A stretch of DNA of 64,000 nucleotides from IMGVR_UViG_3300023184_000025:248001-312000; one strand, 5' to 3'; shown: positions 39,923-58,041, counted from the stretch's first letter. The notes: generated by a model from the sequence alone, not told the origin. A program made the numbers and translations.

Positions 39923-39947
39923 AAAAAAAACCCGCCGAAGCGGGTTC
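39923..39947 (-). terminator. Intrinsic terminator ending the tmRNA
   Basis: aacccgc-ttcg-gcgggtt + U-tract. Confidence 0.9.
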
Positions 39948-39949
39948 TG

Positions 39950-40222
39950 AGTTTCTGTTACGAGGTATGTCTTACCCTAGACGGCTTTTATCAAGCTGCC
40001 AATGCGAACTGTTCGTCGTTTGCGTTTACGTTTTTTGCTTGATTTACGGTCATCGCCTACCGTGCTGTCCACTCTGTTACTCTTTGCCCTGTCAAAACCA
40101 TGCTCACCCCCGACAAGAATATACTAACCTAGTATACTCTTGGTGGAAGTGCCGGGGCTCGAACCCGGGTCCAAGACAACTTTCTCTTCGCCTCTTCCCT
40201 TTCGGGGTTTACAGCAATATTC
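39950..40222 (-). ncRNA. ssrA: tmRNA, circularly permuted (two-piece); tag ANDEQFALAA
   Basis: T-arm/acceptor ..GGGTTCGAGCCCCGGCACTTCCACCA (ends 40141) precedes 5' GGGGGTG (40111); G3:U70 pair; tag ORF 40023-39991. Confidence 0.93.
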
Positions 40223-40855
40223 TTATTTAATCAATCTACGCTTTTGTAAATTCAATTCTGCTATTTTAGCATCGTCTGGCTTTAGATAGTAATTCTTCTC
40301 ACCATCGTTATACCAGTGTCTACCAAACGCATTGTTGTTTTTATTCTTGCGTAGTTGAGTCCATTCAATTGTTGTTATCCAACCTTCTGGAATTTGTTCT
40401 TTATTATACTTTTTGCGTGATGACAAGTCAACCGCATCTTTACCCACACACCAAACTTTTCCAAACTGCGAATTGTTTTCTTTCTGTTGGTGTTGCTTTT
40501 CAGCAAAGGTCTTCTTACGCTTTTCCATTGCTGAGTCAGTGTTTGCCAAATCACACACCTTCTTTTGATGTTCTTTGTTTACAGAAAAATTGTGTTCAGT
40601 GCGAATACCTGTAAATGGATTTGGGTGTAGTTGATGACGCAACTTTCCCGCTTCTCGTTGTCTTATTCTTACTAATTCTTCTTTTGGGCTTAACTTTGCT
40701 AAACCCTGCCACGCAACATAATCTTGCCAACGACCATATTCTTCATATAACTTGCGATGTGCTTCTGCGTGGTCATCAACAGATAATTCTACAAGATTGC
40801 TTGGATCGTCTGTTCCGCCTGCGTGTTTAGGAATAATATGATGTTTGTGGCTCAT
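40223..40855 (-). CDS. HNH homing endonuclease
   Basis: HHIIPKHAGGTDDPSNLVELSVDDHAEAH; C-terminal repeat modules; TATAAATA upstream. Confidence 0.85.
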   Translation of the reverse strand: MSHKHHIIPKHAGGTDDPSNLVELSVDDHAEAHRKLYEEYGRWQDYVAWQGLAKLSPKEELVRIRQREAGKLRHQLHPNPFTGIRTEHNFSVNKEHQKKVCDLANTDSAMEKRKKTFAEKQHQQKENNSQFGKVWCVGKDAVDLSSRKKYNKEQIPEGWITTIEWTQLRKNKNNNAFGRHWYNDGEKNYYLKPDDAKIAELNLQKRRLIK

Positions 40856-47871: not shown

Positions 47872-47948
47872 TGGTGCCCCAGAGGAGACTCGAACTCCTA
47901 AAATTTGGCTTCTAAGACCAACACGTATACCAATTCCGTCACCGGGGC
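47872..47948 (-). tRNA. tRNA-Leu(TAG) with short variable loop
   Basis: Loop ctTAGaa; 77 nt, no long V-arm. Confidence 0.85.
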
Positions 47949-48111
47949 TTTAAATACAGTATGATTAATTGTAACACATCTACTGATATATTGTATGAGA
48001 AATTGGCAAAACAGTCTTATATTTCTCCAACTTACCATAGCACACATCGTGTGTTTGTTCCTGATCCACTGCTGAATACACCCAAACCTAAGTTTATTCC
48101 TGATCCATTAT

Positions 48112-48187
48112 TGGTACCAAGAGACGGGATCGAACCGTCCACACCCGGATTTTCAGTCCGGTGCTCTACCAACTGAGCTATCTTGGC
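48112..48187 (-). tRNA. tRNA-Phe(GAA)
   Basis: Cloverleaf. Confidence 0.93.
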
Positions 48188-48189
48188 AT

Positions 48190-48265
48190 TGGGGTAACTA
48201 ATGGGAATCGAACCCATATTAACGGAATCACAATCCGTGGTGTTAACCTTTACACTATAGTCACC
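48190..48265 (-). tRNA. tRNA-His(GTG)
   Basis: Cloverleaf, G-1:C73. Confidence 0.92.
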
Positions 48266-48270
48266 ATAGA

Positions 48271-48555
48271 TTAATCTTGGTCAGGCGGTAATCCATTACT
48301 GCGTCGATCACGAAGAGTATCAGTGTTCTGAAACATTCGTTTCTCTTGCTGTGTCAACTCTTTAAACGTTTTCCTGGGATTACCGCACATTACACAATTT
48401 GGGTTGCCACAGTTCATAGCATGATGCTTGGCAAACTTATGTGGTTCTTCAACTGGTATCCCAAATTCTTTGGCAATCTTTACCTGCTTGTTAATAGCAT
48501 TATCATCTTTAAGCAATCGCTTGCTATGTTTGAATTTATCGTTTTCGTCTGACAT
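48271..48555 (-). CDS. Basic protein with CGNPNCVMCGNPRK Cys cluster
   Basis: AGGAG RBS, Cys motif. Confidence 0.75.
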   Translation of the reverse strand: MSDENDKFKHSKRLLKDDNAINKQVKIAKEFGIPVEEPHKFAKHHAMNCGNPNCVMCGNPRKTFKELTQQEKRMFQNTDTLRDRRSNGLPPDQD

Positions 48556-48569
48556 TGAATACTCCTATA

Positions 48570-48659
48570 TGGTGGAAGCGGTGAGATTCGAACTCACGGA
48601 CCCTTGCGAGCCGACAGTTTTCAAGACTGTTGCCATAAACCTGACTCGACCACACTTCC
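48570..48659 (-). tRNA. tRNA-Ser(TGA)
   Basis: Long V-arm, loop ctTGAaa. Confidence 0.92.
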
Positions 48660-48662
48660 TGA

Positions 48663-49100
48663 TTATTCTACTTCAGGGGCAGGTTTAACTTTCCCCCATT
48701 CAATAAAATTAAATACTCTCTCTACAATAAAGAAAAAAGTCATATTTGTCAATGCCTGTGCTATTGCAAATAGCACAGCGTCGGACCCACTGCTTTTAAT
48801 AATGAATATGGCTATGAGATATCCAACAAACATAGTTATTGCACGATAGATAATGGTTTTAATTACACTACGTTTGATATTGTCAACTCCTGAATTGTTT
48901 CTTGCCCAACCAGTAAGCAACCACAACCTGTCATGCACATAATAAATTGCTGTGCCTACTACAATTATAATTAAGCCAACCATACCAGCTGACGACATGC
49001 TGGCGCCAACCAGCAGTGATAACAACATGGCAGCTACCACAGAGAAAAATCTGTATATAACTGCTTTTACTATTGTTCTTGTTTGTGTTTCTTTTATCAT
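48663..49100 (-). CDS. Tandem DUF2061-like membrane protein
   Basis: ET..RTIVKAVIYR..YYVHDRLW repeated as RSVIKTIIYR..FFIVERVF. Confidence 0.75.
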   Translation of the reverse strand: MIKETQTRTIVKAVIYRFFSVVAAMLLSLLVGASMSSAGMVGLIIIVVGTAIYYVHDRLWLLTGWARNNSGVDNIKRSVIKTIIYRAITMFVGYLIAIFIIKSSGSDAVLFAIAQALTNMTFFFIVERVFNFIEWGKVKPAPEVE

Positions 49101-49122
49101 ATTACTTCCTTATATTTAATAC

Positions 49123-49196
49123 TGGCGTACCCACTAGGACTCGAACCTAGACTGACGGTTTTGGAGACCGCGATGCTGCCATTACACTATGGATAC
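49123..49196 (-). tRNA. tRNA-Trp(CCA)
   Basis: Cloverleaf. Confidence 0.92.
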
Positions 49197-49200
49197 AAAT

Positions 49201-49278
49201 TGGAACAACGGGTGAGATTTGAACTCACGACTTTACGGATTTGCAATCCGTTGCTTTTGACCACTCAGCCACCGTTGC
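49201..49278 (-). tRNA. tRNA-Cys(GCA)
   Basis: Cloverleaf, U73. Confidence 0.9.
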
Positions 49279-49283
49279 ATAAT

Positions 49284-49360
49284 TGGTCGGAATAGTAGGA
49301 TTCGAACCTACGACCTCCTGGTCCCAAACCAGGCGCACTACCAGGCTGTGCTACACTCCG
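49284..49360 (-). tRNA. tRNA-Pro(TGG)
   Basis: Cloverleaf. Confidence 0.93.
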
Positions 49361-49366
49361 AATAAC

Positions 49367-49441
49367 TGGTGGGTGATGAGAGGATCGAACTCCCGACAAA
49401 CTGCGTGTAAGGCAGCGACTCTACCGCTGAGCTAATCACCC
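49367..49441 (-). tRNA. tRNA-Val(TAC)
   Basis: Cloverleaf. Confidence 0.93.
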
Positions 49442-49447
49442 TAAACA

Positions 49448-49521
49448 TGGAGCGGGGTAAGAGAATCGAACTCTCAGCATTAGCTTGGAAGGCTAAGGTA
49501 TTACCACTATACGAACCCCGC
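49448..49521 (-). tRNA. tRNA-Gly(TCC)
   Basis: Cloverleaf. Confidence 0.93.
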
Positions 49522-49539
49522 ATTGTAATTTACTTATAT

Positions 49540-49614
49540 TGGTAGCCATGGACAGTTTCGAAATGTCGACCCCGACCTTATCAAGATCGTGCTCTTCCTC
49601 TGAGCTACACGGCT
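49540..49614 (-). tRNA. tRNA-Ile(GAT)
   Basis: Loop ttGATaa; T-stem closes with T-A. Confidence 0.88.
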
Positions 49615-49620
49615 AAAATC

Positions 49621-49697
49621 TGGCAGGAGATATAGGATTCGAACCTATGCGTGTCGGAATCAAAATCCGATGCCTTAACCAACTTGGCGAATCTCCA
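49621..49697 (-). tRNA. tRNA-Gln(TTG)
   Basis: Cloverleaf. Confidence 0.92.
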
Positions 49698-49705
49698 ACA
49701 AAGCC

Positions 49706-49781
49706 TGGTGGTAATGGCTGGACTCGAACCAGCGATAGACTGCGTATGAAGCAGTTGCATTGGCCACTATGCTACATTACC
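49706..49781 (-). tRNA. tRNA-Met(CAT), elongator (Ile2 not excluded)
   Basis: Loop ttCATac. Confidence 0.8.
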
Positions 49782-49896
49782 ATATAGAGGCACTCTCAAC
49801 AGCAGGCCTAGGAGGCAATCTGGTTGCTGAAACTTTTGCATCTGCAGATACTCAGTTTCTTCTCCTGCTTTGACTTACGCCAAGAATGCTTTTATA

Positions 49897-49972
49897 TGGT
49901 AGGACGTATTGGATTCGAACCAATGACCAATAGATTAAAAGTCTACTGCTCTACCAACTGAGCTAACGTCCC
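49897..49972 (-). tRNA. tRNA-Lys(TTT)
   Basis: Cloverleaf. Confidence 0.93.
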
Positions 49973-50023
49973 ACTAATCTTCTCACTCTTATCACTGTCC
50001 ATGTGGACTCTCCTTAAAAACTA

Positions 50024-50099
50024 TGGTGGAGGATACAGGGATCGAACCTGCGACCTACTGGTTGCAAACCAGTCGCTCTCCCAACTGAGCTAATCCCCC
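50024..50099 (-). tRNA. tRNA-Ala(TGC)
   Basis: Cloverleaf, G3:U70. Confidence 0.93.
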
Positions 50100-50105
50100 A
50101 AATAC

Positions 50106-50182
50106 TGGTACCACCTGAGCGAGTTGAACGCCCTACCCCCAAGTTCGTAGCCTGGTGCTCTATCCAAATGAGCTAAGGTGGT
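50106..50182 (-). tRNA. tRNA-Arg(ACG)
   Basis: Cloverleaf. Confidence 0.9.
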
Positions 50183-50188
50183 ATAAAA

Positions 50189-50264
<76 letters not shown>

Positions 50265-50269
50265 TTGTT

Positions 50270-50345
50270 TGGCTCCTCGACCTGGGCTCGAACCAGGGAC
50301 AACTTGATTAACAGTCAAGTGCTCTACCAACTGAGCTATCAAGGA
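50270..50345 (-). tRNA. tRNA-Asn(GTT)
   Basis: Cloverleaf. Confidence 0.93.
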
Positions 50346-50534
50346 ATAAAATAGTTAACACACTCCGAGGAATGTGTGTATTAAAGCACTCTAAAATACT
50401 TAGGCTGCCTGTTCTTAAAGAATGCTTTAATACGCTGTAATTTTTCCCTACACAAGAGTAGTTCCATCCTACAGGCCGCCCATTTGCCCATGTTTAGAGT
50501 GCAGGCTAGGATCTCGTTTCCTATAACACTTTGG

Positions 50535-50708
50535 CTAATTTACACTAAACGTTGACAATTTGGTCAACGCTTCGTGATGTTTTCTAGCACGTTCAAACTT
50601 ATCTTGAATAAGTTTTTGAAGCTGTTCTTTGGACATCTCTCCGAGAGCAGTTTCATAAGCTTGTTCTACGATTCGTTCGTTTAATTTTTTGTAATCTATC
50701 TGTTTCAT
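50535..50708 (-). CDS. 57-aa helical protein MKQIDYKKLNERIVEQAYE.. (not in ORF track)
   Basis: AAGGA RBS right after the attenuator terminator. Confidence 0.65.
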   Translation of the reverse strand: MKQIDYKKLNERIVEQAYETALGEMSKEQLQKLIQDKFERARKHHEALTKLSTFSVN

Positions 50709-50720
50709 TTTTTCCTTTGT

Positions 50721-50760
50721 AAAAACAAAAAACCCCAGGGTGTTTAGTCCTAGGGTCCTT
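50721..50760 (-). terminator. Intrinsic terminator of attenuator 2
   Basis: GGACCCUAGG..CCUGGGGUUU + U-tract. Confidence 0.8.
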
Positions 50761-50781
50761 TTAGAATTTGATGTATTTTTA

Positions 50782-50913
50782 TTACATCTTGTCTCCTACG
50801 GACCCTTGATTTTCTGGAATTGTAATTGCACAGTTAAAATTAAAACCGCGTGACCAGGCAGATGCTGTCTGGAGCATAACGGGTTTTAACGATAACATGT
50901 AATGTTTGTTCAT
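50782..50913 (-). CDS. 43-aa putative attenuator leader peptide MNKHYMLSLKPVMLQTASAWSRGFNFNCAITIPENQGSVGDKM
   Basis: Directly after promoter 50924-50952; contains AGGGUCC complementary to terminator 5' arm. Confidence 0.7.
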   Translation of the reverse strand: MNKHYMLSLKPVMLQTASAWSRGFNFNCAITIPENQGSVGDKM

Positions 50914-50923
50914 CTTAGTTTCT

Positions 50924-50990
50924 ATTGTACTTTATTTATATCTTAAAGTCAACCTTTAAGGTAAAAATGTTGTGTTGTATAGATACAACA
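50924..50990 (-). promoter_or_regulatory. Promoter TTGACT-17-TACAAT with embedded TATAAATA and upstream TGTTG-N8-CAACA
   Basis: Direct motif matches. Confidence 0.75.
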
Positions 50991-50999
50991 CTCCTGAGT

Positions 51000-51074
51000 T
51001 GGTTGCGGGGGAAGGATTCGAACCTCCGTCTTCCGGGTTATGAGCCCGATAGTCTACCACTGACGTACCCCGCG
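51000..51074 (-). tRNA. tRNA-fMet(CAT)
   Basis: C1:A72 mismatch, three G-C pairs in anticodon stem. Confidence 0.92.
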
Positions 51075-51096
51075 GTAAAAGTTAGAGTTTTTATAT

Positions 51097-51172
51097 TGGC
51101 GGTCTTAGGGGGTAACGATCCCCACTCTTACGGCGTGACAAGCCGTCGTGCGTCCATGAACACTTTAAGACC
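51097..51172 (-). tRNA. tRNA-Asp(GTC), atypical T-loop ATCGTTA
   Basis: Loop ttGTCac, G73. Confidence 0.85.
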
Positions 51173-51175
51173 AAA

Positions 51176-51605
51176 TTTTTATAGTCAAGCACCGAGTATG
51201 CCAATTTAGGAGTCCGGTGCTTCCGTTCCAAAGCCGATGCAGTTATATCAGGATCCGCCTCCGGCCGATGGGACCCGAATAGTGTATGCGTCCATACACG
51301 ATACCTTATCGATGCTTGACTATAAAAACATATTGAAACACACTAACTACCTTGGTATGTACTAAAGTTCATAGAACCGCTACGACCCTATCTTTAATGT
51401 GCTTCAATATGCTCTGCATCCCCCGGCGGTAATTATAGAGTATCAAGATACGACGCTATCGTACCCATCACACACTCCTTCCACCCGCTTCCCGACAGGG
51501 ACCGTTCTCGCATTGCTAGCGGCCTTTTGGTTCGAAGACTACCACCCGTACATGTCACTGTACTTCTCATCGTGTGGGTCACACTATCCGGAGACACCCG
51601 GAACG
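51176..51605 (-). ncRNA. Cluster of candidate structured RNAs (stem-closed 51176-51328 and 51329-51411; GC-rich 51412-51605)
   Basis: 16-bp and ~18-bp terminal stems; no credible ORF. Confidence 0.5.
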
Positions 51606-51608
51606 TTC

Positions 51609-51695
51609 TGGTGGATGAGGTTGGACTTGAACCAACAATGCCATTACGACGGAAGATTTACAGTCTCCTGGGGTTACCAATTTTCCTACACATCC
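51609..51695 (-). tRNA. tRNA-Tyr(GTA)
   Basis: Long V-arm, loop ctGTAaa. Confidence 0.9.
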
Positions 51696-51887
51696 AAAAT
51701 TAGGATAAGCTACTTGTTTTCCAAACAAGCCCTTAATTGAGCGGTTACTCTGTCCATCTCTTTTATTCTAATGTCTGTGTGCAGAGAGATACTGCCTATC
51801 AGATTCTGGATTGCTCCGCTAACGGTCTTCTGCCACCGGACCTCTATCGCTAGTCAAGCGCCATTTTAACGAAAATAGTAACGGGAT

Positions 51888-51963
51888 TTGGTACTGGGTA
51901 CGGGAATCGAACCCGTCTTACAAACGTGAAAGGCTTGTGTCCTAACCGATAGACGAACCCAGC
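51888..51963 (-). tRNA. tRNA-Glu(TTC)
   Basis: Loop ctTTCac. Confidence 0.9.
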
Positions 51964-52088
51964 ATAAAGAAAAACCCTATAGCAGTCCAGTTAAGCAACC
52001 GAACAGGGCCGTGTTAAAGAGAGAAGCCACGGTTGCAGGACCTAGTGCTCTTGCGAGGAAGTATCCAGGCGATGTGGCTTCAAAAACT

Positions 52089-52178
52089 TGGCGGAGCGAC
52101 TGGGAGTCGAACCCAGTCAACGCTTTAACACGTTGTACGGATTAGCAATCCGCTGCCTTACCGTTCGGCCACCGCTCC
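52089..52178 (-). tRNA. tRNA-Ser(GCT)
   Basis: Long V-arm, loop ttGCTaa. Confidence 0.92.
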
Positions 52179-52187
52179 AAAAAAAAT

Positions 52188-52425
52188 GCTATATTAAAAT
52201 ACACTAAAGGAACCATTGTGCATCTATGTCTACACTATACGAACGTCTCGTATAGGCCTGCACGGTCATTACTGCCTACATACTCCGCCGCTTCTCTGGG
52301 ATTAGTTCCGTATCATCTAAACGGACCCCGGTTTCATAGACTGTAAGATTGCGTAGGGCGGCCCCTGTGCTCGCGTCTTACAGTCCCTAACGGTGTAGGT
52401 AACCTTTAATACATTTTAATATAGT
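52188..52425 (-). ncRNA. Candidate ~240-nt RNA closed by a ~22-bp stem
   Basis: ctatattaaaatgtattaaagg / cctttagtgtattttaatatag with G-U pairs. Confidence 0.55.
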
Positions 52426-52460
52426 AACCCTTGCGGGTTACTACATAAAAACTCTAAAAT

Positions 52461-52554
52461 TTTTAAAGAACATTGTTGATTTCTCAACGTATGCATCAAT
52501 TATATGACACTTTGCGATTTTTGTCAACTACTTGTTTGTTGTATTTTTACAACA
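52461..52554 (-). promoter_or_regulatory. Consensus promoter TTGACA-17-TATAAT, upstream TGTTG-N8-CAACA, downstream rrn-like boxA TGTTCTTTAAAA
   Basis: Promoter 52499-52527; palindrome 52537-52554; boxA 52461-52472. Confidence 0.78.
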
Positions 52555-52624
52555 CTCTGTTGTTGTCCGGAATTGCTTCCTTCATGTTTCTATTGTACTA
52601 GATCTGCCAATTTTGGTCTACCTA

Positions 52625-52657
52625 TAAAAAGAAAACCCGCCTAGTTGGCGGGTCTTT
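52625..52657 (-). terminator. Intrinsic terminator of attenuator 1
   Basis: AAAGACCCGCC-aacua-GGCGGGUUUUCUUUUU. Confidence 0.88.
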
Positions 52658-52675
52658 GTTGATAGTACTTTCTAG

Positions 52676-52780
52676 TTATCTAGATTTCTCAAGACCCGCA
52701 TCAGACATGTGTTCATAGTCATAACTCACAAAATCTCGTGTGTTACTATTAGTGTGCATAGACAATGGTTGATAGTTCAT
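52676..52780 (-). CDS. 34-aa putative attenuator leader peptide MNYQPLSMHTNSNTRDFVSYDYEHMSDAGLEKSR
   Basis: TATAAT 6 nt before ATG (leaderless); GCGGGUCUU is a perfect 9-nt complement of terminator 5' arm. Confidence 0.7.
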   Translation of the reverse strand: MNYQPLSMHTNSNTRDFVSYDYEHMSDAGLEKSR

Positions 52781-52883
52781 AGTACTATTATATATCCATA
52801 ATCTTTAAAAATTAATTTTTTCCTAGTTTTTTTACCAAAGCAACTACCCGGGTCCAAATAAATAAATTTTTAAAAAGTATCAA

Positions 52884-56122: not shown

Positions 56123-58041
<1,919 letters not shown>

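What the first reader, a model, noticed from the sequence alone, without database searches (positions are those of the whole stretch)
50721..52800. Two codon-matched leader-peptide attenuators heading the phage tRNA operons: a candidate tRNA-starvation sensor
Seen: two unannotated minus-strand units of unrelated sequence share one layout. Each has a promoter, a short ORF, a GC-rich word in the last ~7-8 codons complementary to the 5' arm of an intrinsic terminator ~20 nt past the stop, and then tRNA genes. The codon content of the two leaders is partitioned like the tRNAs. Leader 1 is rich in Ser/Tyr/Asp/Glu/Met and precedes tRNA-Ser(GCT), Glu, Tyr, Asp and fMet. Leader 2 samples essentially every amino acid and precedes the block Asn-Thr-Arg-Ala-Lys-Met-Gln-Ile-Gly-Val-Pro-Cys-Trp-Ser-His-Phe-Leu. 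Established: ribosome-mediated attenuation (his/trp/thr leaders) uses this logic, and phage tRNAs can offset host tRNA depletion or anticodon-nuclease defence. Inference: a ribosome reaching the stop masks the antiterminator and transcription terminates. Stalling for lack of a charged tRNA frees the antiterminator and turns on the phage's own tRNA genes. I know of no described attenuators controlling phage tRNA arrays.
Basis: partly seen in the sequence, partly recalled or inferred. Interest (0 to 1): 0.92.

Follow-up and report, generated by a model that had tools for sequence, protein, structure and literature searches.

The report
Translation-sensing attenuators before phage tRNA arrays
A freshwater giant phage and about 40 relatives place a short translated reading frame, whose end can pair with a transcription stop signal, in front of their tRNA gene arrays. 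This looks like a switch that lets the tRNA genes be transcribed when ribosomes lag, but the claimed match between leader codons and nearby tRNAs does not hold up.

Summary
Of 11 strong terminators in the window, only these two have an upstream complement to their 5' arm plus a short ORF.

**Unit 2** (50952-50721, minus strand) belongs to a family found in about 40 distinct IMG/VR phage contigs.
- All have a sigma-70 promoter and an ORF of 35-51 codons that is always open.
- The 'word' pairs with the terminator's 5' arm, and this pairing is kept by compensatory changes.
- The stop codon sits in an apical mini-hairpin.
- After the terminator come a conserved 57-aa gene, a conserved ~190-nt RNA and the tRNA array.

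Naked RNA folds into the antiterminator in 41 of 41 cases. The likely logic is that a ribosome reaching the stop melts the antiterminator and transcription terminates. A slow or absent ribosome gives read-through.

**Unit 1** (52792-52626) has the same layout but unrelated sequence. It occurs in only two lineages, and a consensus promoter lies between it and its tRNAs.

Codon matching is weak for leader 1 (p = 0.04, not kept in its relative) and absent across the family. No termination, translation or stalling was measured. I found no published description of such an element.

The parts
52787..52804 (-). Unit 1 promoter core: a conserved block AGATTATGGATATATAAT with the -10 box TATAAT at 52792-52787, 6 nt before the ATG (a probably leaderless mRNA)
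   Evidence: Sequence. Conservation with L004 starts exactly at this block, and the sequence upstream of it is unrelated. No good -35 box at the correct spacing; the site is not listed by the promoter scan.
52676..52780 (-). Leader ORF 1, 34 codons plus stop (MNYQPLSMHTNSNTRDFVSYDYEHMSDAGLEKSR)
   Evidence: The ORF is open and the same length in the only relative (L003-L006/L206), with 5 synonymous and 10 non-synonymous codon changes.
52691..52699 (-). Unit 1 antiterminator word GCGGGTCTT, which pairs with 52656-52648
   Evidence: Exact 9-nt complement. Duplex z = -4.8 against shuffles. Eight of 10 arm nucleotides pair with it before the 3' arm exists. Invariant in L004.
52672..52683 (-). Unit 1 mini-hairpin CTAG-ATAA-CTAG holding the stop codon TAA (52678-52676)
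   Evidence: Invariant in L004. Same arrangement as in the unit 2 family.
52626..52656 (-). Terminator 1: AAGACCCGCC-AACTA-GGCGGGTTTT plus a T-run
   Evidence: 10 pairs, 6 G-C. Present in the MFE fold. Invariant in L004.
52499..52620 (-). Two promoter-like sites between terminator 1 and the tRNAs: TAGACC-17-TACAAT (52620-52592) and the consensus TTGACA-17-TATAAT (52527-52499)
   Evidence: 9/12 and 12/12 matches. 95% conserved in L003-L006 and similar to promoter modules of relatives. Homologous arrangement in L019.
51000..52178 (-). tRNA block 1: Ser(GCT), Glu, Tyr, Asp, Met, with large structured spacers; it ends at the hairpin and T-run at 50991-50972
50924..50952 (-). Unit 2 promoter TTGACT-17-TACAAT; the ATG lies 10 nt after the -10 box
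   Evidence: A sigma-70-like promoter is present upstream of the leader in 40 of 40 family members.
50782..50913 (-). Leader ORF 2, 43 codons plus stop; the Trp codon at 50856-50854 is invariant in the family
   Evidence: The ORF is open in 40 of 40 members, while the other two frames carry 3.1 and 4.4 stops on average and are never open. Codon-position differences are 62/51/85 and pN/pS is 0.44. Trp is invariant in 40 of 40.
50794..50806 (-). Unit 2 antiterminator 5' strand: the word AGGGTCC (50806-50800) plus TAGGA (50798-50794)
   Evidence: It pairs with GGACCCT (50758-50752) and TTCTA (50766-50762) in the MFE fold. Family covariation is shown. The word is read in different frames in different members.
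50771..50787 (-). Apical mini-hairpin ATGTA-ATAAAAA-TACAT containing the stop codon (50784-50782)
   Evidence: The stop lies inside such a hairpin in 38 of 40 members, with a mean z of -2.9.
50721..50758 (-). Terminator 2: GGACCCTAGG-ACTAAACAC-CCTGGGGTT plus TTTTTTGTTTTT
   Evidence: In the family the terminator is 96.9% paired, with 13 cells changed on both sides.
50535..50708 (-). ORF57: a conserved 57-aa two-helix protein, the first gene after the attenuator
   Evidence: Function unknown.
50346..50534 (-). Conserved structured RNA ('post57') between ORF57 and the first tRNA
   Evidence: Conserved in 46 loci. Fold z = -3.1. In L019 it follows the terminator directly, with no ORF57.
47872..50345 (-). 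Main tRNA array: Asn, Thr, Arg, Ala, Lys, Met, Gln, Ile, Gly, Val, Pro, Cys, Trp, Ser, His, Phe, Leu

Best explanation
Unit 2 is a ribosome-mediated (leader-ORF) transcription attenuator of a previously undescribed family. Unit 1 is probably an independent, analogous one.

**Proposed mechanism**
1. A host-type sigma-70 promoter starts an mRNA whose first element is a translated ORF of 35-51 codons.
2. The 3' end of that ORF forms the 5' strand of a long hairpin, the antiterminator. It consists of the word paired with the terminator's 5' arm, a GGAG:CTTC extension, and an apical mini-hairpin that holds the stop codon.
3. On naked RNA this hairpin forms before the terminator's 3' arm is made and is about as stable as the terminator. 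Without a ribosome, the polymerase therefore reads through.
4. A ribosome that keeps pace with the polymerase and reaches the stop codon unwinds the 5' strand. It does not cover the 5' arm, which begins 18-39 nt after the stop. The arm is then free to pair with the 3' arm, and transcription stops at the U-run.
5. Slow, stalled or missing ribosomes therefore switch on ORF57, the conserved RNA and the tRNA array.

**Shown:** the anatomy, its conservation, the covariation of both helices, the coding signature and the folding energetics.

**Inferred:** that the terminator terminates, that the ORF is translated, the direction of the switch, and the physiological signal. The signal is probably general translation capacity, which could include tRNA depletion, rather than specific matched codons.
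For: **Family and position**
- ORF57 has 46 relatives in IMG/VR and always heads the tRNA array.
- The 330 nt upstream of it show one conserved module.
- A profile built without the window row finds unit 2 at E = 3.6e-18.

**Translation**
- The ORF is open in 40 of 40 members, against 0 of 80 for the alternative frames.
- There is an excess of third-position changes (62/51/85, p = 0.01) and pN/pS is 0.44.
- A start codon follows either a purine-rich, weakly Shine-Dalgarno-like stretch (GAGAAAC) or lies 6-10 nt after the -10 box.

**Antiterminator**
- The word-arm duplex scores z below -2.8 against shuffles in 35 of 38 members and below -3.5 in 34.
- Pairs are formed in 84.7% of cells, with 15 cells changed on both sides and 0 of 500 shuffles as high.
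- RNAalifold predicts this helix on its own, with covariation also in the extension.
- The A-U to G-C pair changes at least 10 times on a tree built from flanking sequence. The two sides move together in 4.6 of 5 independent comparisons and never in opposite directions.
- The same swap separates the window (AGGGTCC/GGACCCT) from its closest relative L003 (GGGGTCC/GGACCCC).
- The word is read in different frames in different members, so it is conserved as RNA.

**Terminator:** 96.9% of cells are paired, with 13 double changes.

**Switch**
- Before the 3' arm exists, the arm pairs with the word in 41 of 41 sequences.
- The antiterminator persists in the full-length MFE fold in 32 of 41.
- The two states are nearly isoenergetic (-27.9 versus -29.2 kcal/mol).

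**Geometry:** the stop codon always lies between the word and the arm, and inside an apical hairpin in 38 of 40 members.

**Specificity:** of 291 terminator contexts in 128 loci, 31 score z below -3.5, and 29 of those have a short ORF. Of the 39 contexts at z below -2.8, 31 lie directly before ORF57.

**Unit 1**
- The layout is the same.
- There are 0 changes in the 46 stem and loop positions, against about 20% divergence in the 5' part of the ORF, when compared with L004.
- In L019 the equivalent position, before the sp1 spacer and the first tRNA block, holds a family-type attenuator.
Against: - No experiment supports the model. The metatranscriptome contigs come from relatives and show neither 3' ends at the U-run nor any coverage of unit 1.
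- The leader also contains conserved helices inside the ORF (P1, and P2 joining TTGG...GCGATT with GATCGY...CCAG). Part of the 'peptide' conservation, including the invariant Trp codon, may therefore be RNA constraint.
- The terminator loop is long (8-9 nt).
- In most members a ribosome at the stop reaches only the 3' edge of the word, which ends 14-17 nt before the stop. The melting of the helix is inferred, not shown.
- L088 and L091 have weak antiterminators.
- Unit 1 has only one relative, with no informative substitutions, and a consensus promoter downstream of its terminator.
- The phage may also use a polymerase of its own.
Confidence: 0.65

Rival explanations
1. The leader is an RNA-only sensor: a riboswitch-like element, or one that binds a protein or a tRNA. 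Its conserved helices bind a ligand or factor that chooses between antiterminator and terminator. The ORF is secondary or only tunes the switch.
For: - There are conserved helices P1 and P2 inside the ORF, and a conserved 5' stem-loop.
- The word is conserved as RNA regardless of reading frame.
- pN/pS is only moderately low (0.44).
- The terminator loop ATTAAAAAC is conserved.
Against: - The ORF is open in 40 of 40 members, against 0 of 80 alternative frames.
- There is an excess of third-position changes.
- Start signals are kept in two different forms: behind a purine-rich, weakly SD-like stretch, and leaderless.
- The stop codon is always placed inside the antiterminator.
- There is no Rfam match, including T-box.
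- P1 and P2 are absent or different in the leaderless subgroup, which includes the window.
Confidence: 0.12
2. A nascent-peptide arrest sensor. The conserved Trp...Asp-Arg-Thr/Leu-Pro-Glu motif stalls the ribosome, as in TnaC or SecM, in response to a small molecule or factor. The stall lies just upstream of the word, so the antiterminator can form.
For: - Trp is invariant in 40 of 40 members and DR(T/L)PE is present in most.
- In many members Pro lies 12 residues after Trp. From my own knowledge, TnaC has W12 and P24 at that spacing.
- The Pro codon lies about 12 nt before the word, so a ribosome stalled there would abut the word without covering it (sequence).
Against: - The Trp-Pro spacing varies between 12 and 14 residues, and the motif is missing in the window subgroup and in L017, which has no Trp at all.
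- The motif's codons also form helix P2.
- Leader 1 has no Trp.
Confidence: 0.08
3. These are ordinary small genes, or small-RNA genes, each with its own promoter and terminator. The tRNA operons have their own promoters, and the upstream complement has a function unrelated to termination control, such as RNA stability, processing or a trans-acting attenuator-derived sRNA.
For: - A consensus promoter lies downstream of terminator 1, and arrays in relatives have internal promoters.
- Metatranscriptome contig depth over the leader 2 region is 6-100 times higher than over ORF57. This is biased by which parts are conserved among relatives.
- Attenuator-derived sRNAs are known (rnTrpL, PMC6614838).
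Against: - The antiterminator and terminator are mutually exclusive, isoenergetic and both kept by covariation.
- ORF57's ribosome-binding site directly follows the U-run, with no promoter in between, in all relatives.
- The module always sits at the head of the array.
- The leader peptides are poorly conserved for functional proteins.
Confidence: 0.08
4. One reading: each leader senses shortage of exactly those charged tRNAs that are encoded just downstream, through matched 'hungry' codons.
For: - At the amino-acid level, leader 1 is enriched in Ser, Glu, Tyr, Asp and Met (rank 21 of 15,504 possible five-residue sets). At the codon level it has 12 of 33 matched codons against a 22% background (p = 0.044). 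Leader 1 differs from leader 2 at Fisher p = 0.03.
- L017's leader ends in ...SLYEFAFEYHDFRDF and precedes Tyr, Glu, Phe and Leu tRNAs.
- A pairing permutation gives 0.197 against 0.182.
Against: - Three of the 5 Ser codons in leader 1 are TCT, which tRNA-Ser(GCT) does not read.
- The enrichment falls to 10 of 33 (p = 0.17) in the only relative, where two Ser become Cys and two Asp become Asn.
- About 5% of random 33-codon windows of phage genes score as high.
- There are no codon runs.
- The family effect is less than one codon per leader, is confounded by relatedness, and is smaller than for the ORF57 control (0.244).
- 'Leader 2 samples every amino acid' makes no testable prediction.
Confidence: 0.07

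Closest known systems
Leader-peptide transcription attenuators of amino-acid operons (trp, his, thr, leu, pheA; Rfam leader families)
   Same: - A promoter-proximal short translated ORF is followed by an intrinsic terminator.
- The terminator's 5' arm can instead pair with a segment at the end of the ORF.
- A ribosome reaching the stop favours the terminator, and a ribosome held upstream favours the antiterminator.
   Different: - There is no run of regulatory codons.
- There is no dominant 1:2 anti-antiterminator, so untranslated RNA folds into the read-through form. From my own knowledge, trp and his leaders instead show 'superattenuation' when untranslated.
- The stop codon sits in the apex of the antiterminator.
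- The regulated genes are a small protein, an RNA and tRNAs of a phage, not biosynthetic enzymes.
- The only Rfam similarity is a sub-threshold Trp_leader hit on unit 1 (21.8 bits against a gathering score of 41, E = 0.27).
uORF attenuators that sense general translation stress (vmlR: PMC9226507; topAI-yjhQ: PMC12121999; msrD: 10.1101/2021.11.29.470318; leaderless polycysteine uORFs of mycobacteria: 10.1101/834739)
   Same: - A short uORF reports ribosome stalling and opens downstream expression.
- Some of these uORFs are leaderless, like unit 1 and 9 of the 40 family leaders.
- The response is to translation state rather than to one biosynthetic end product.
   Different: - Those systems control resistance factors, toxin-antitoxin genes or cysteine genes in cellular genomes.
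- There is no sequence relationship.
- Here the output would itself raise translation capacity (tRNAs), closing a feedback loop.
Anabaena trn operon (26 tRNA genes), de-repressed under translational stress by the RHH repressor TrcR (PMC10272220)
   Same: An accessory array of tRNA genes is kept low and switched on when translation is stressed.
   Different: The mechanism there is a DNA-binding repressor at the promoter, on a cyanobacterial megaplasmid. Here it is a cis-acting leader ORF with a terminator and antiterminator, in phages.
T-box riboswitches
   Same: A terminator/antiterminator choice that reports tRNA status.
   Different: T-boxes have no leader ORF and read uncharged tRNA directly through a specifier loop and a T-box bulge. 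There is no Rfam T-box match here, and an ORF is conserved.

Membership tests
Ribosome-mediated leader-peptide transcription attenuator (general class) | A short translated ORF between the promoter and the regulated genes | tested here: met
   The ORF is open in 40 of 40 family members, against 0 of 80 alternative frames. Codon-position differences are 62/51/85 and pN/pS is 0.44. Start signals are conserved. Translation itself was not measured. Unit 1: the ORF is kept in its one relative.
Ribosome-mediated leader-peptide transcription attenuator (general class) | An intrinsic terminator between the leader ORF and the regulated genes | tested here: met
   A G+C-rich stem with a U-run is found in both units. 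The family stem is 96.9% paired with 13 double changes. Termination activity was not measured.
Ribosome-mediated leader-peptide transcription attenuator (general class) | An antiterminator that excludes the terminator and whose 5' strand lies where the translating ribosome can reach it | tested here: met
   See for covariation; for formation in 41 of 41 sequences and near-equal energies; and for the stop codon lying between the two strands.
Ribosome-mediated leader-peptide transcription attenuator (general class) | Read-through responds to ribosome position on the leader | not testable with these tools
   This needs coupled transcription-translation, reporter fusions, Term-seq or Ribo-seq. The metatranscriptome contigs were uninformative.
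Amino-acid operon leaders (trp/his/thr/pheA type) | A cluster or run of codons for the sensed amino acid in the leader | tested here: not met
   There are no runs in either leader. Codon tracking is absent in the family and marginal for leader 1.
Amino-acid operon leaders (trp/his/thr/pheA type) | A four-segment topology with 1:2 pairing, so that an untranslated leader terminates | tested here: not met
   Whole-leader folds keep the arm paired to the word in 41 of 41 sequences. The terminator is absent from the full-length MFE fold in 32 of 41. A 1:2-like pairing appears only in one fold of unit 1.
Amino-acid operon leaders (trp/his/thr/pheA type) | A match to a curated Rfam leader model | tested here: not met
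   There are no matches at the gathering threshold. The only hit is Trp_leader at 21.8 bits against a cutoff of 41, E = 0.27, on unit 1.
The phage 'ORF57-head' attenuator family defined here | Sequence similarity to the family profile, and a position directly before ORF57 or the post57 RNA and the tRNA array | tested here: met
   Unit 2 is found by nhmmer at E = 3.6e-18 with a profile that excludes the window, and synteny is shown. Unit 1 is not detected (E above 10), so it is an analogue and not a member.
T-box riboswitch | Stem I with a specifier loop, a T-box antiterminator bulge, and no leader ORF | tested here: not met
   There is no RF00230 match even at E up to 1, and an ORF is conserved.

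The most novel reading that the evidence does not exclude
Phage tRNA arrays are under a built-in feedback loop. A leader ORF measures how well host ribosomes are translating, and it opens transcription of the phage's own tRNAs, together with a conserved small protein and RNA, only when translation falters. Faltering could follow tRNA cleavage by host anticodon-nuclease defences, starvation, or codon-demand overload late in infection. This would be the first cis-acting sensor shown to control viral tRNA genes. It would be a conditional counter-defence circuit.
Probability: 0.4. Interest if true: 0.9.

Novelty: new variant of a known kind. Interest (0 to 1): 0.78.

Why it matters
Phage tRNAs are now seen as tools against host tRNA-targeting immunity and host shut-off (for example PMC12409363), but how their expression is controlled is largely unknown. 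A conserved leader-ORF switch at the head of tRNA arrays would show that some phages express their tRNAs conditionally, in response to translation state.

It would also give a compact element driven by a sigma-70 promoter that can be tested directly in laboratory bacteria. It extends ribosome-mediated attenuation to viruses and to genes for the translation machinery itself. Its simplified two-state design reads through by default and needs a ribosome to terminate.

Tried and rejected
- **GenBank phages.** Near and distant searches found only tRNA matches and no relative.
- **L001 and L002.** They are identical to the window and useless for comparison.
- **Leader peptides as queries.** They are too short for the search for related loci. 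tblastn with them found nothing beyond the window's own contigs. Homology only became visible through synteny with ORF57.
- **More relatives of unit 1.** A word-plus-arm pattern scan of IMG/VR gave 104 loci, but only the same two lineages are related.
- **RNA evidence.** Four metatranscriptomes hold only contigs of relatives (mostly 90-95% alike). There is no coverage of unit 1, and at least one contig crosses terminator 2 in a relative. The data say nothing either way about attenuation.
- **Rfam.** There are no family matches. The Trp_leader hit is sub-threshold and is treated as a resemblance of shape only.
- **Identity of ORF57.** Pfam, PHROGs, PDB sequence search and Foldseek on a model with pLDDT 80 all gave nothing. 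A Gp5.5-like hit occurs in 1 of 36 members and is taken as chance.
- **T-box and simple small-gene readings.** Both were considered and rejected (see the rival explanations and membership tests).


Full report
**What the window is.** The 64-kb window matches, at 100% identity, a 345-kb IMG/VR contig from a freshwater metagenome. It carries 28 tRNA genes and a betaproteobacterial-type tmRNA. GenBank phages hold no close relative.

**Checking the observation.**
- Unit 1 has TATAAT at 52792-52787, six bases before the ATG of a 34-codon ORF (52780-52676). The word GCGGGTCTT (52699-52691) is the exact complement of AAGACCCGC in the 5' arm of a 10-bp terminator (52656-52632, followed by a T-run).
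- Unit 2 has the promoter TTGACT-17-TACAAT (50952-50924) and a 43-codon ORF (50913-50782). Its word AGGGTCC (50806-50800) is complementary to GGACCCT (50758-50752) of the terminator at 50758-50731, which is followed by TTTTTTGTTTTT.
- I scanned all strong terminator-like sites in the window and scored how well the 60 nt upstream can pair with the 5' arm, compared with shuffles. These two are the top outliers of 11 (z = -4.8 and -4.1; the others range from -2.8 to +1.1). They are also the only two with a short ORF ending just before the arm.
- The layout is therefore real and not chance.

**Three corrections to the observation.**
- tRNAs do not follow immediately. Terminator 1 is followed by two promoter-like sites, including the best sigma-70 match in 9 kb (TTGACA-17-TATAAT, 12/12, at 52527-52499), and then a 260-nt structured spacer. 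Terminator 2 is followed by a 57-codon gene with a good ribosome-binding site and a 189-nt RNA.
- The -35 box named for unit 1 is 40 nt from the -10 box.
- The codon partition is marginal (see the codon-matching section below).

**Relatives.** The leader peptides are too short to search with. The 57-aa gene after terminator 2 (ORF57) has 46 relatives in IMG/VR at 55-100% identity. In every one it is the gene that heads a tRNA array, with the first tRNA 330-500 nt after its start (up to about 1,100 nt in two loci). Only the window phage has five tRNAs upstream of it.

The 330 nt upstream of ORF57 form one conserved module. In order, it contains:
- a sigma-70 promoter, present in 40 of 40 members;
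- either a small 5' stem-loop with a purine-rich stretch (GAGAAAC) before the ATG, or an ATG 6-10 nt after the -10 box (9 of the 40 leaders are near-leaderless);
- an ORF of 35-51 codons;
- the word;
- a GGAG-like stretch;
- a small hairpin containing the stop codon;
- the terminator;
- the ORF57 ribosome-binding site.

A nucleotide profile built without the window's row finds window unit 2 at E = 3.6e-18 but does not find unit 1.

**Is the leader translated?**
- The ORF is open in all 40 distinct sequences. The other two frames carry on average 3.1 and 4.4 stops and are never open.
- Over 16 phylogenetically independent pairs, differences by codon position are 62/51/85 (p = 0.01) and pN/pS is 0.44.
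- One Trp is invariant in 40 of 40, and most members have DR(T/L)PE.
- The word itself is read in different frames in different members (QGS versus RVR), so it is conserved as RNA and not as peptide.
- RNAalifold also finds conserved helices inside the ORF, including one that pairs the Trp codon region with the Pro codon region. Part of the peptide conservation may therefore be RNA constraint.
- Translation is strongly suggested but was not measured.

**Is the antiterminator real?**
- The word-arm duplex scores z below -2.8 against shuffles in 35 of 38 distinct sequences, and below -3.5 in 34.
- It exists in many compensated versions: AGGGTCC/GGACCCT, GGGGTCC/GGACCCC, GGGTTCC/GGAACCC, AGGGGTTTC/GAAACCCCT, GGGGTT/AACCCC and GGGGTTCCG/CGGGACCCC.
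- On a plain MAFFT alignment the helix is 84.7% paired, with 15 cells changed on both sides. None of 500 shuffles reaches this, and sliding the partner columns collapses the pairing.
- One pair is A-U in 23 sequences and G-C in 9. The terminator's own partner for that arm base stays G throughout, so the change in the word follows the arm and serves only the antiterminator pairing.
- RNAalifold, left to itself, predicts this helix rather than the terminator. It adds a covarying GGAG:CTTC extension.
- On a tree built from ORF57 plus the downstream RNA, leaving the leader out, that pair changes state at least 10 times. In independent comparisons the two sides move together in 4.6 of 5 and never in opposite directions.
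- The window and its closest relative L003 differ by exactly this double change.
- The terminator stem is 96.9% paired, with 13 double changes.

**How the switch should work.**
- When each leader is folded up to the end of the terminator loop, the 5' arm is paired with the word region in 41 of 41 sequences (40 family members plus window unit 1). In the MFE fold of the full-length RNA the antiterminator still wins in 32 of 41.
- The two states are nearly isoenergetic (-27.9 versus -29.2 kcal/mol on average).
- Naked RNA is therefore in the read-through form. This differs from trp and his leaders, where, from my own knowledge, an untranslated leader terminates.
- The stop codon always lies between the two strands of the antiterminator. 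The word ends 2-29 nt before the stop (median 15), and the arm starts 18-39 nt after it (median 27). In 38 of 40 members the stop sits in an apical mini-hairpin whose sequence varies but whose pairing is kept.
- A ribosome that reaches the stop must have unwound the whole 5' strand. It does not cover the arm, which can then pair with the 3' arm.
- The inferred logic is that prompt translation gives termination, while slow, stalled or absent ribosomes give read-through into ORF57, the conserved RNA and the tRNAs. The direction of this switch is an inference from geometry and folding.

**Codon matching.**
- Nine codons are read by the five block-1 tRNAs (AGY, GAR, TAY, GAY, ATG). They make up 22% of the phage's long ORFs and 12 of 33 codons in leader 1 (p = 0.044). 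About 5% of random 33-codon windows of phage genes score as high.
- Three of leader 1's five Ser codons are TCT, which tRNA-Ser(GCT) does not read.
- In the only relative, two Ser become Cys and two Asp become Asn, and the count falls to 10 of 33 (p = 0.17).
- Across 32 loci, the fraction of leader codons read by the first five tRNAs of the same array is 0.197, against 0.182 for shuffled pairings. That difference is less than one codon, is confounded by relatedness, and is smaller than the value for the ORF57 control (0.244).
- An anecdote in the other direction: L017's leader ends in ...SLYEFAFEYHDFRDF and precedes Tyr, Glu, Phe and Leu tRNAs.
- Overall the codon-matching claim is not supported. 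A general sensor of translation speed fits the data better.

**Unit 1.**
- It is found only in the window lineage and in one lineage that is 88% identical.
- The ORF stays open with 5 synonymous and 10 non-synonymous codon changes. The word, mini-hairpin, arm, loop and 3' arm show 0 changes in 46 positions, against about 20% divergence in the 5' part of the ORF. The RNA elements are therefore the constrained part.
- There is no covariation to test.
- In contig L019 the equivalent position holds a family-type attenuator followed by an ORF57 paralogue. That position lies before homologous promoters, the homologous spacer RNA and the first tRNA block. A second attenuator in L019 precedes the post57 RNA directly, with no ORF57.
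- An attenuator at the head of each tRNA block is thus a recurring arrangement, and ORF57 is optional.
- The consensus promoter between terminator 1 and the tRNAs is conserved too. Unit 1 can therefore only add to tRNA transcription and cannot gate it.

**Comparison with known systems.**
- The element works like a leader-peptide attenuator. It meets that class's structural criteria, but it lacks codon runs and the four-segment topology, and it matches no Rfam leader model. The only hit is a sub-threshold Trp_leader match at 21.8 bits against a cutoff of 41.
- In logic it is closest to uORF attenuators that sense general translation stress (PMC9226507, PMC12121999), including leaderless ones (10.1101/834739).
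- In outcome it is closest to the Anabaena tRNA operon, which is de-repressed under translational stress by a protein repressor (PMC10272220).
- Three literature searches for attenuators or leader ORFs in front of phage tRNA genes found nothing.

**Limits.**
- The metatranscriptome contigs were uninformative.
- The host is unknown. The only cellular-genome hit is a 6-kb contig binned with a Polynucleobacter MAG.
- The functions of ORF57 and of the conserved RNAs are unknown.

Noticed in passing
window 50346-50534 (minus strand): A ~190-nt structured RNA lies between ORF57 and the first tRNA. It is conserved at 72-91% in 46 loci, its fold z is -3.1, and it has no Rfam match. In L019 it directly follows the attenuator.
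   Followed up: partly
window 51173-51608, 51696-51888, 52179-52440 (minus strand): There are large G+C-rich spacers between the tRNAs of block 1. The first 200 nt of the 436-nt spacer are conserved at 72-90% in a dozen other contigs. Metatranscriptome contig depth over 51340-51840 reaches about 3,700 in one run. These look like abundant stable RNAs of unknown kind, with no Rfam match.
   Followed up: partly
window 50535-50708 (minus strand): ORF57 is a 54-59-aa two-helix protein with 78% mean column identity across 36 relatives. It always comes first after the attenuator. It has no match in Pfam, PHROGs, PDB or Foldseek. Paralogues sit after other attenuators in L019 (8545-8703) and L017 (11916 onward).
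   Followed up: partly
L017:11680-11900: A third leader type occurs here: 40 codons, no Trp, and the stop directly after the word. It has a family-type terminator and lies right after the GroEL-like gene, ahead of an ORF57-like gene and the Tyr-Glu-Phe-Leu tRNAs.
   Followed up: partly
L129:5686-5935 (JBBAKF010000113.1): The only match to the attenuator core among 185,579 species genomes is a 6.2-kb contig binned in a Polynucleobacter MAG. Together with the betaproteobacterial-type tmRNA at window 39925-40269, this hints at the host group.
   Followed up: no
window 52592-52603 and 50918-50929; many loci: The -10 context TACAATAGA(A/T)AC recurs at promoters of this phage group. Nine of the 40 leaders, plus unit 1, start 6-10 nt after the -10 box, so the mRNAs are leaderless or nearly so.
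   Followed up: partly
window 52532-52585 (minus strand): Between terminator 1 and the consensus promoter there is a 12-codon mini-ORF (MKEAIPDNNRVL), followed by the hairpin GTGTTGTA-AAAA-TACAACA. The same hairpin arms form the terminator after tRNA-Met at 50991-50972.
   Followed up: no
window 56123-57742 (minus strand): A GroEL-type chaperonin gene (Pfam Cpn60_TCP1, E = 2.5e-77) has more than 580 relatives in IMG/VR. This makes it a useful marker for this phage group.
   Followed up: no
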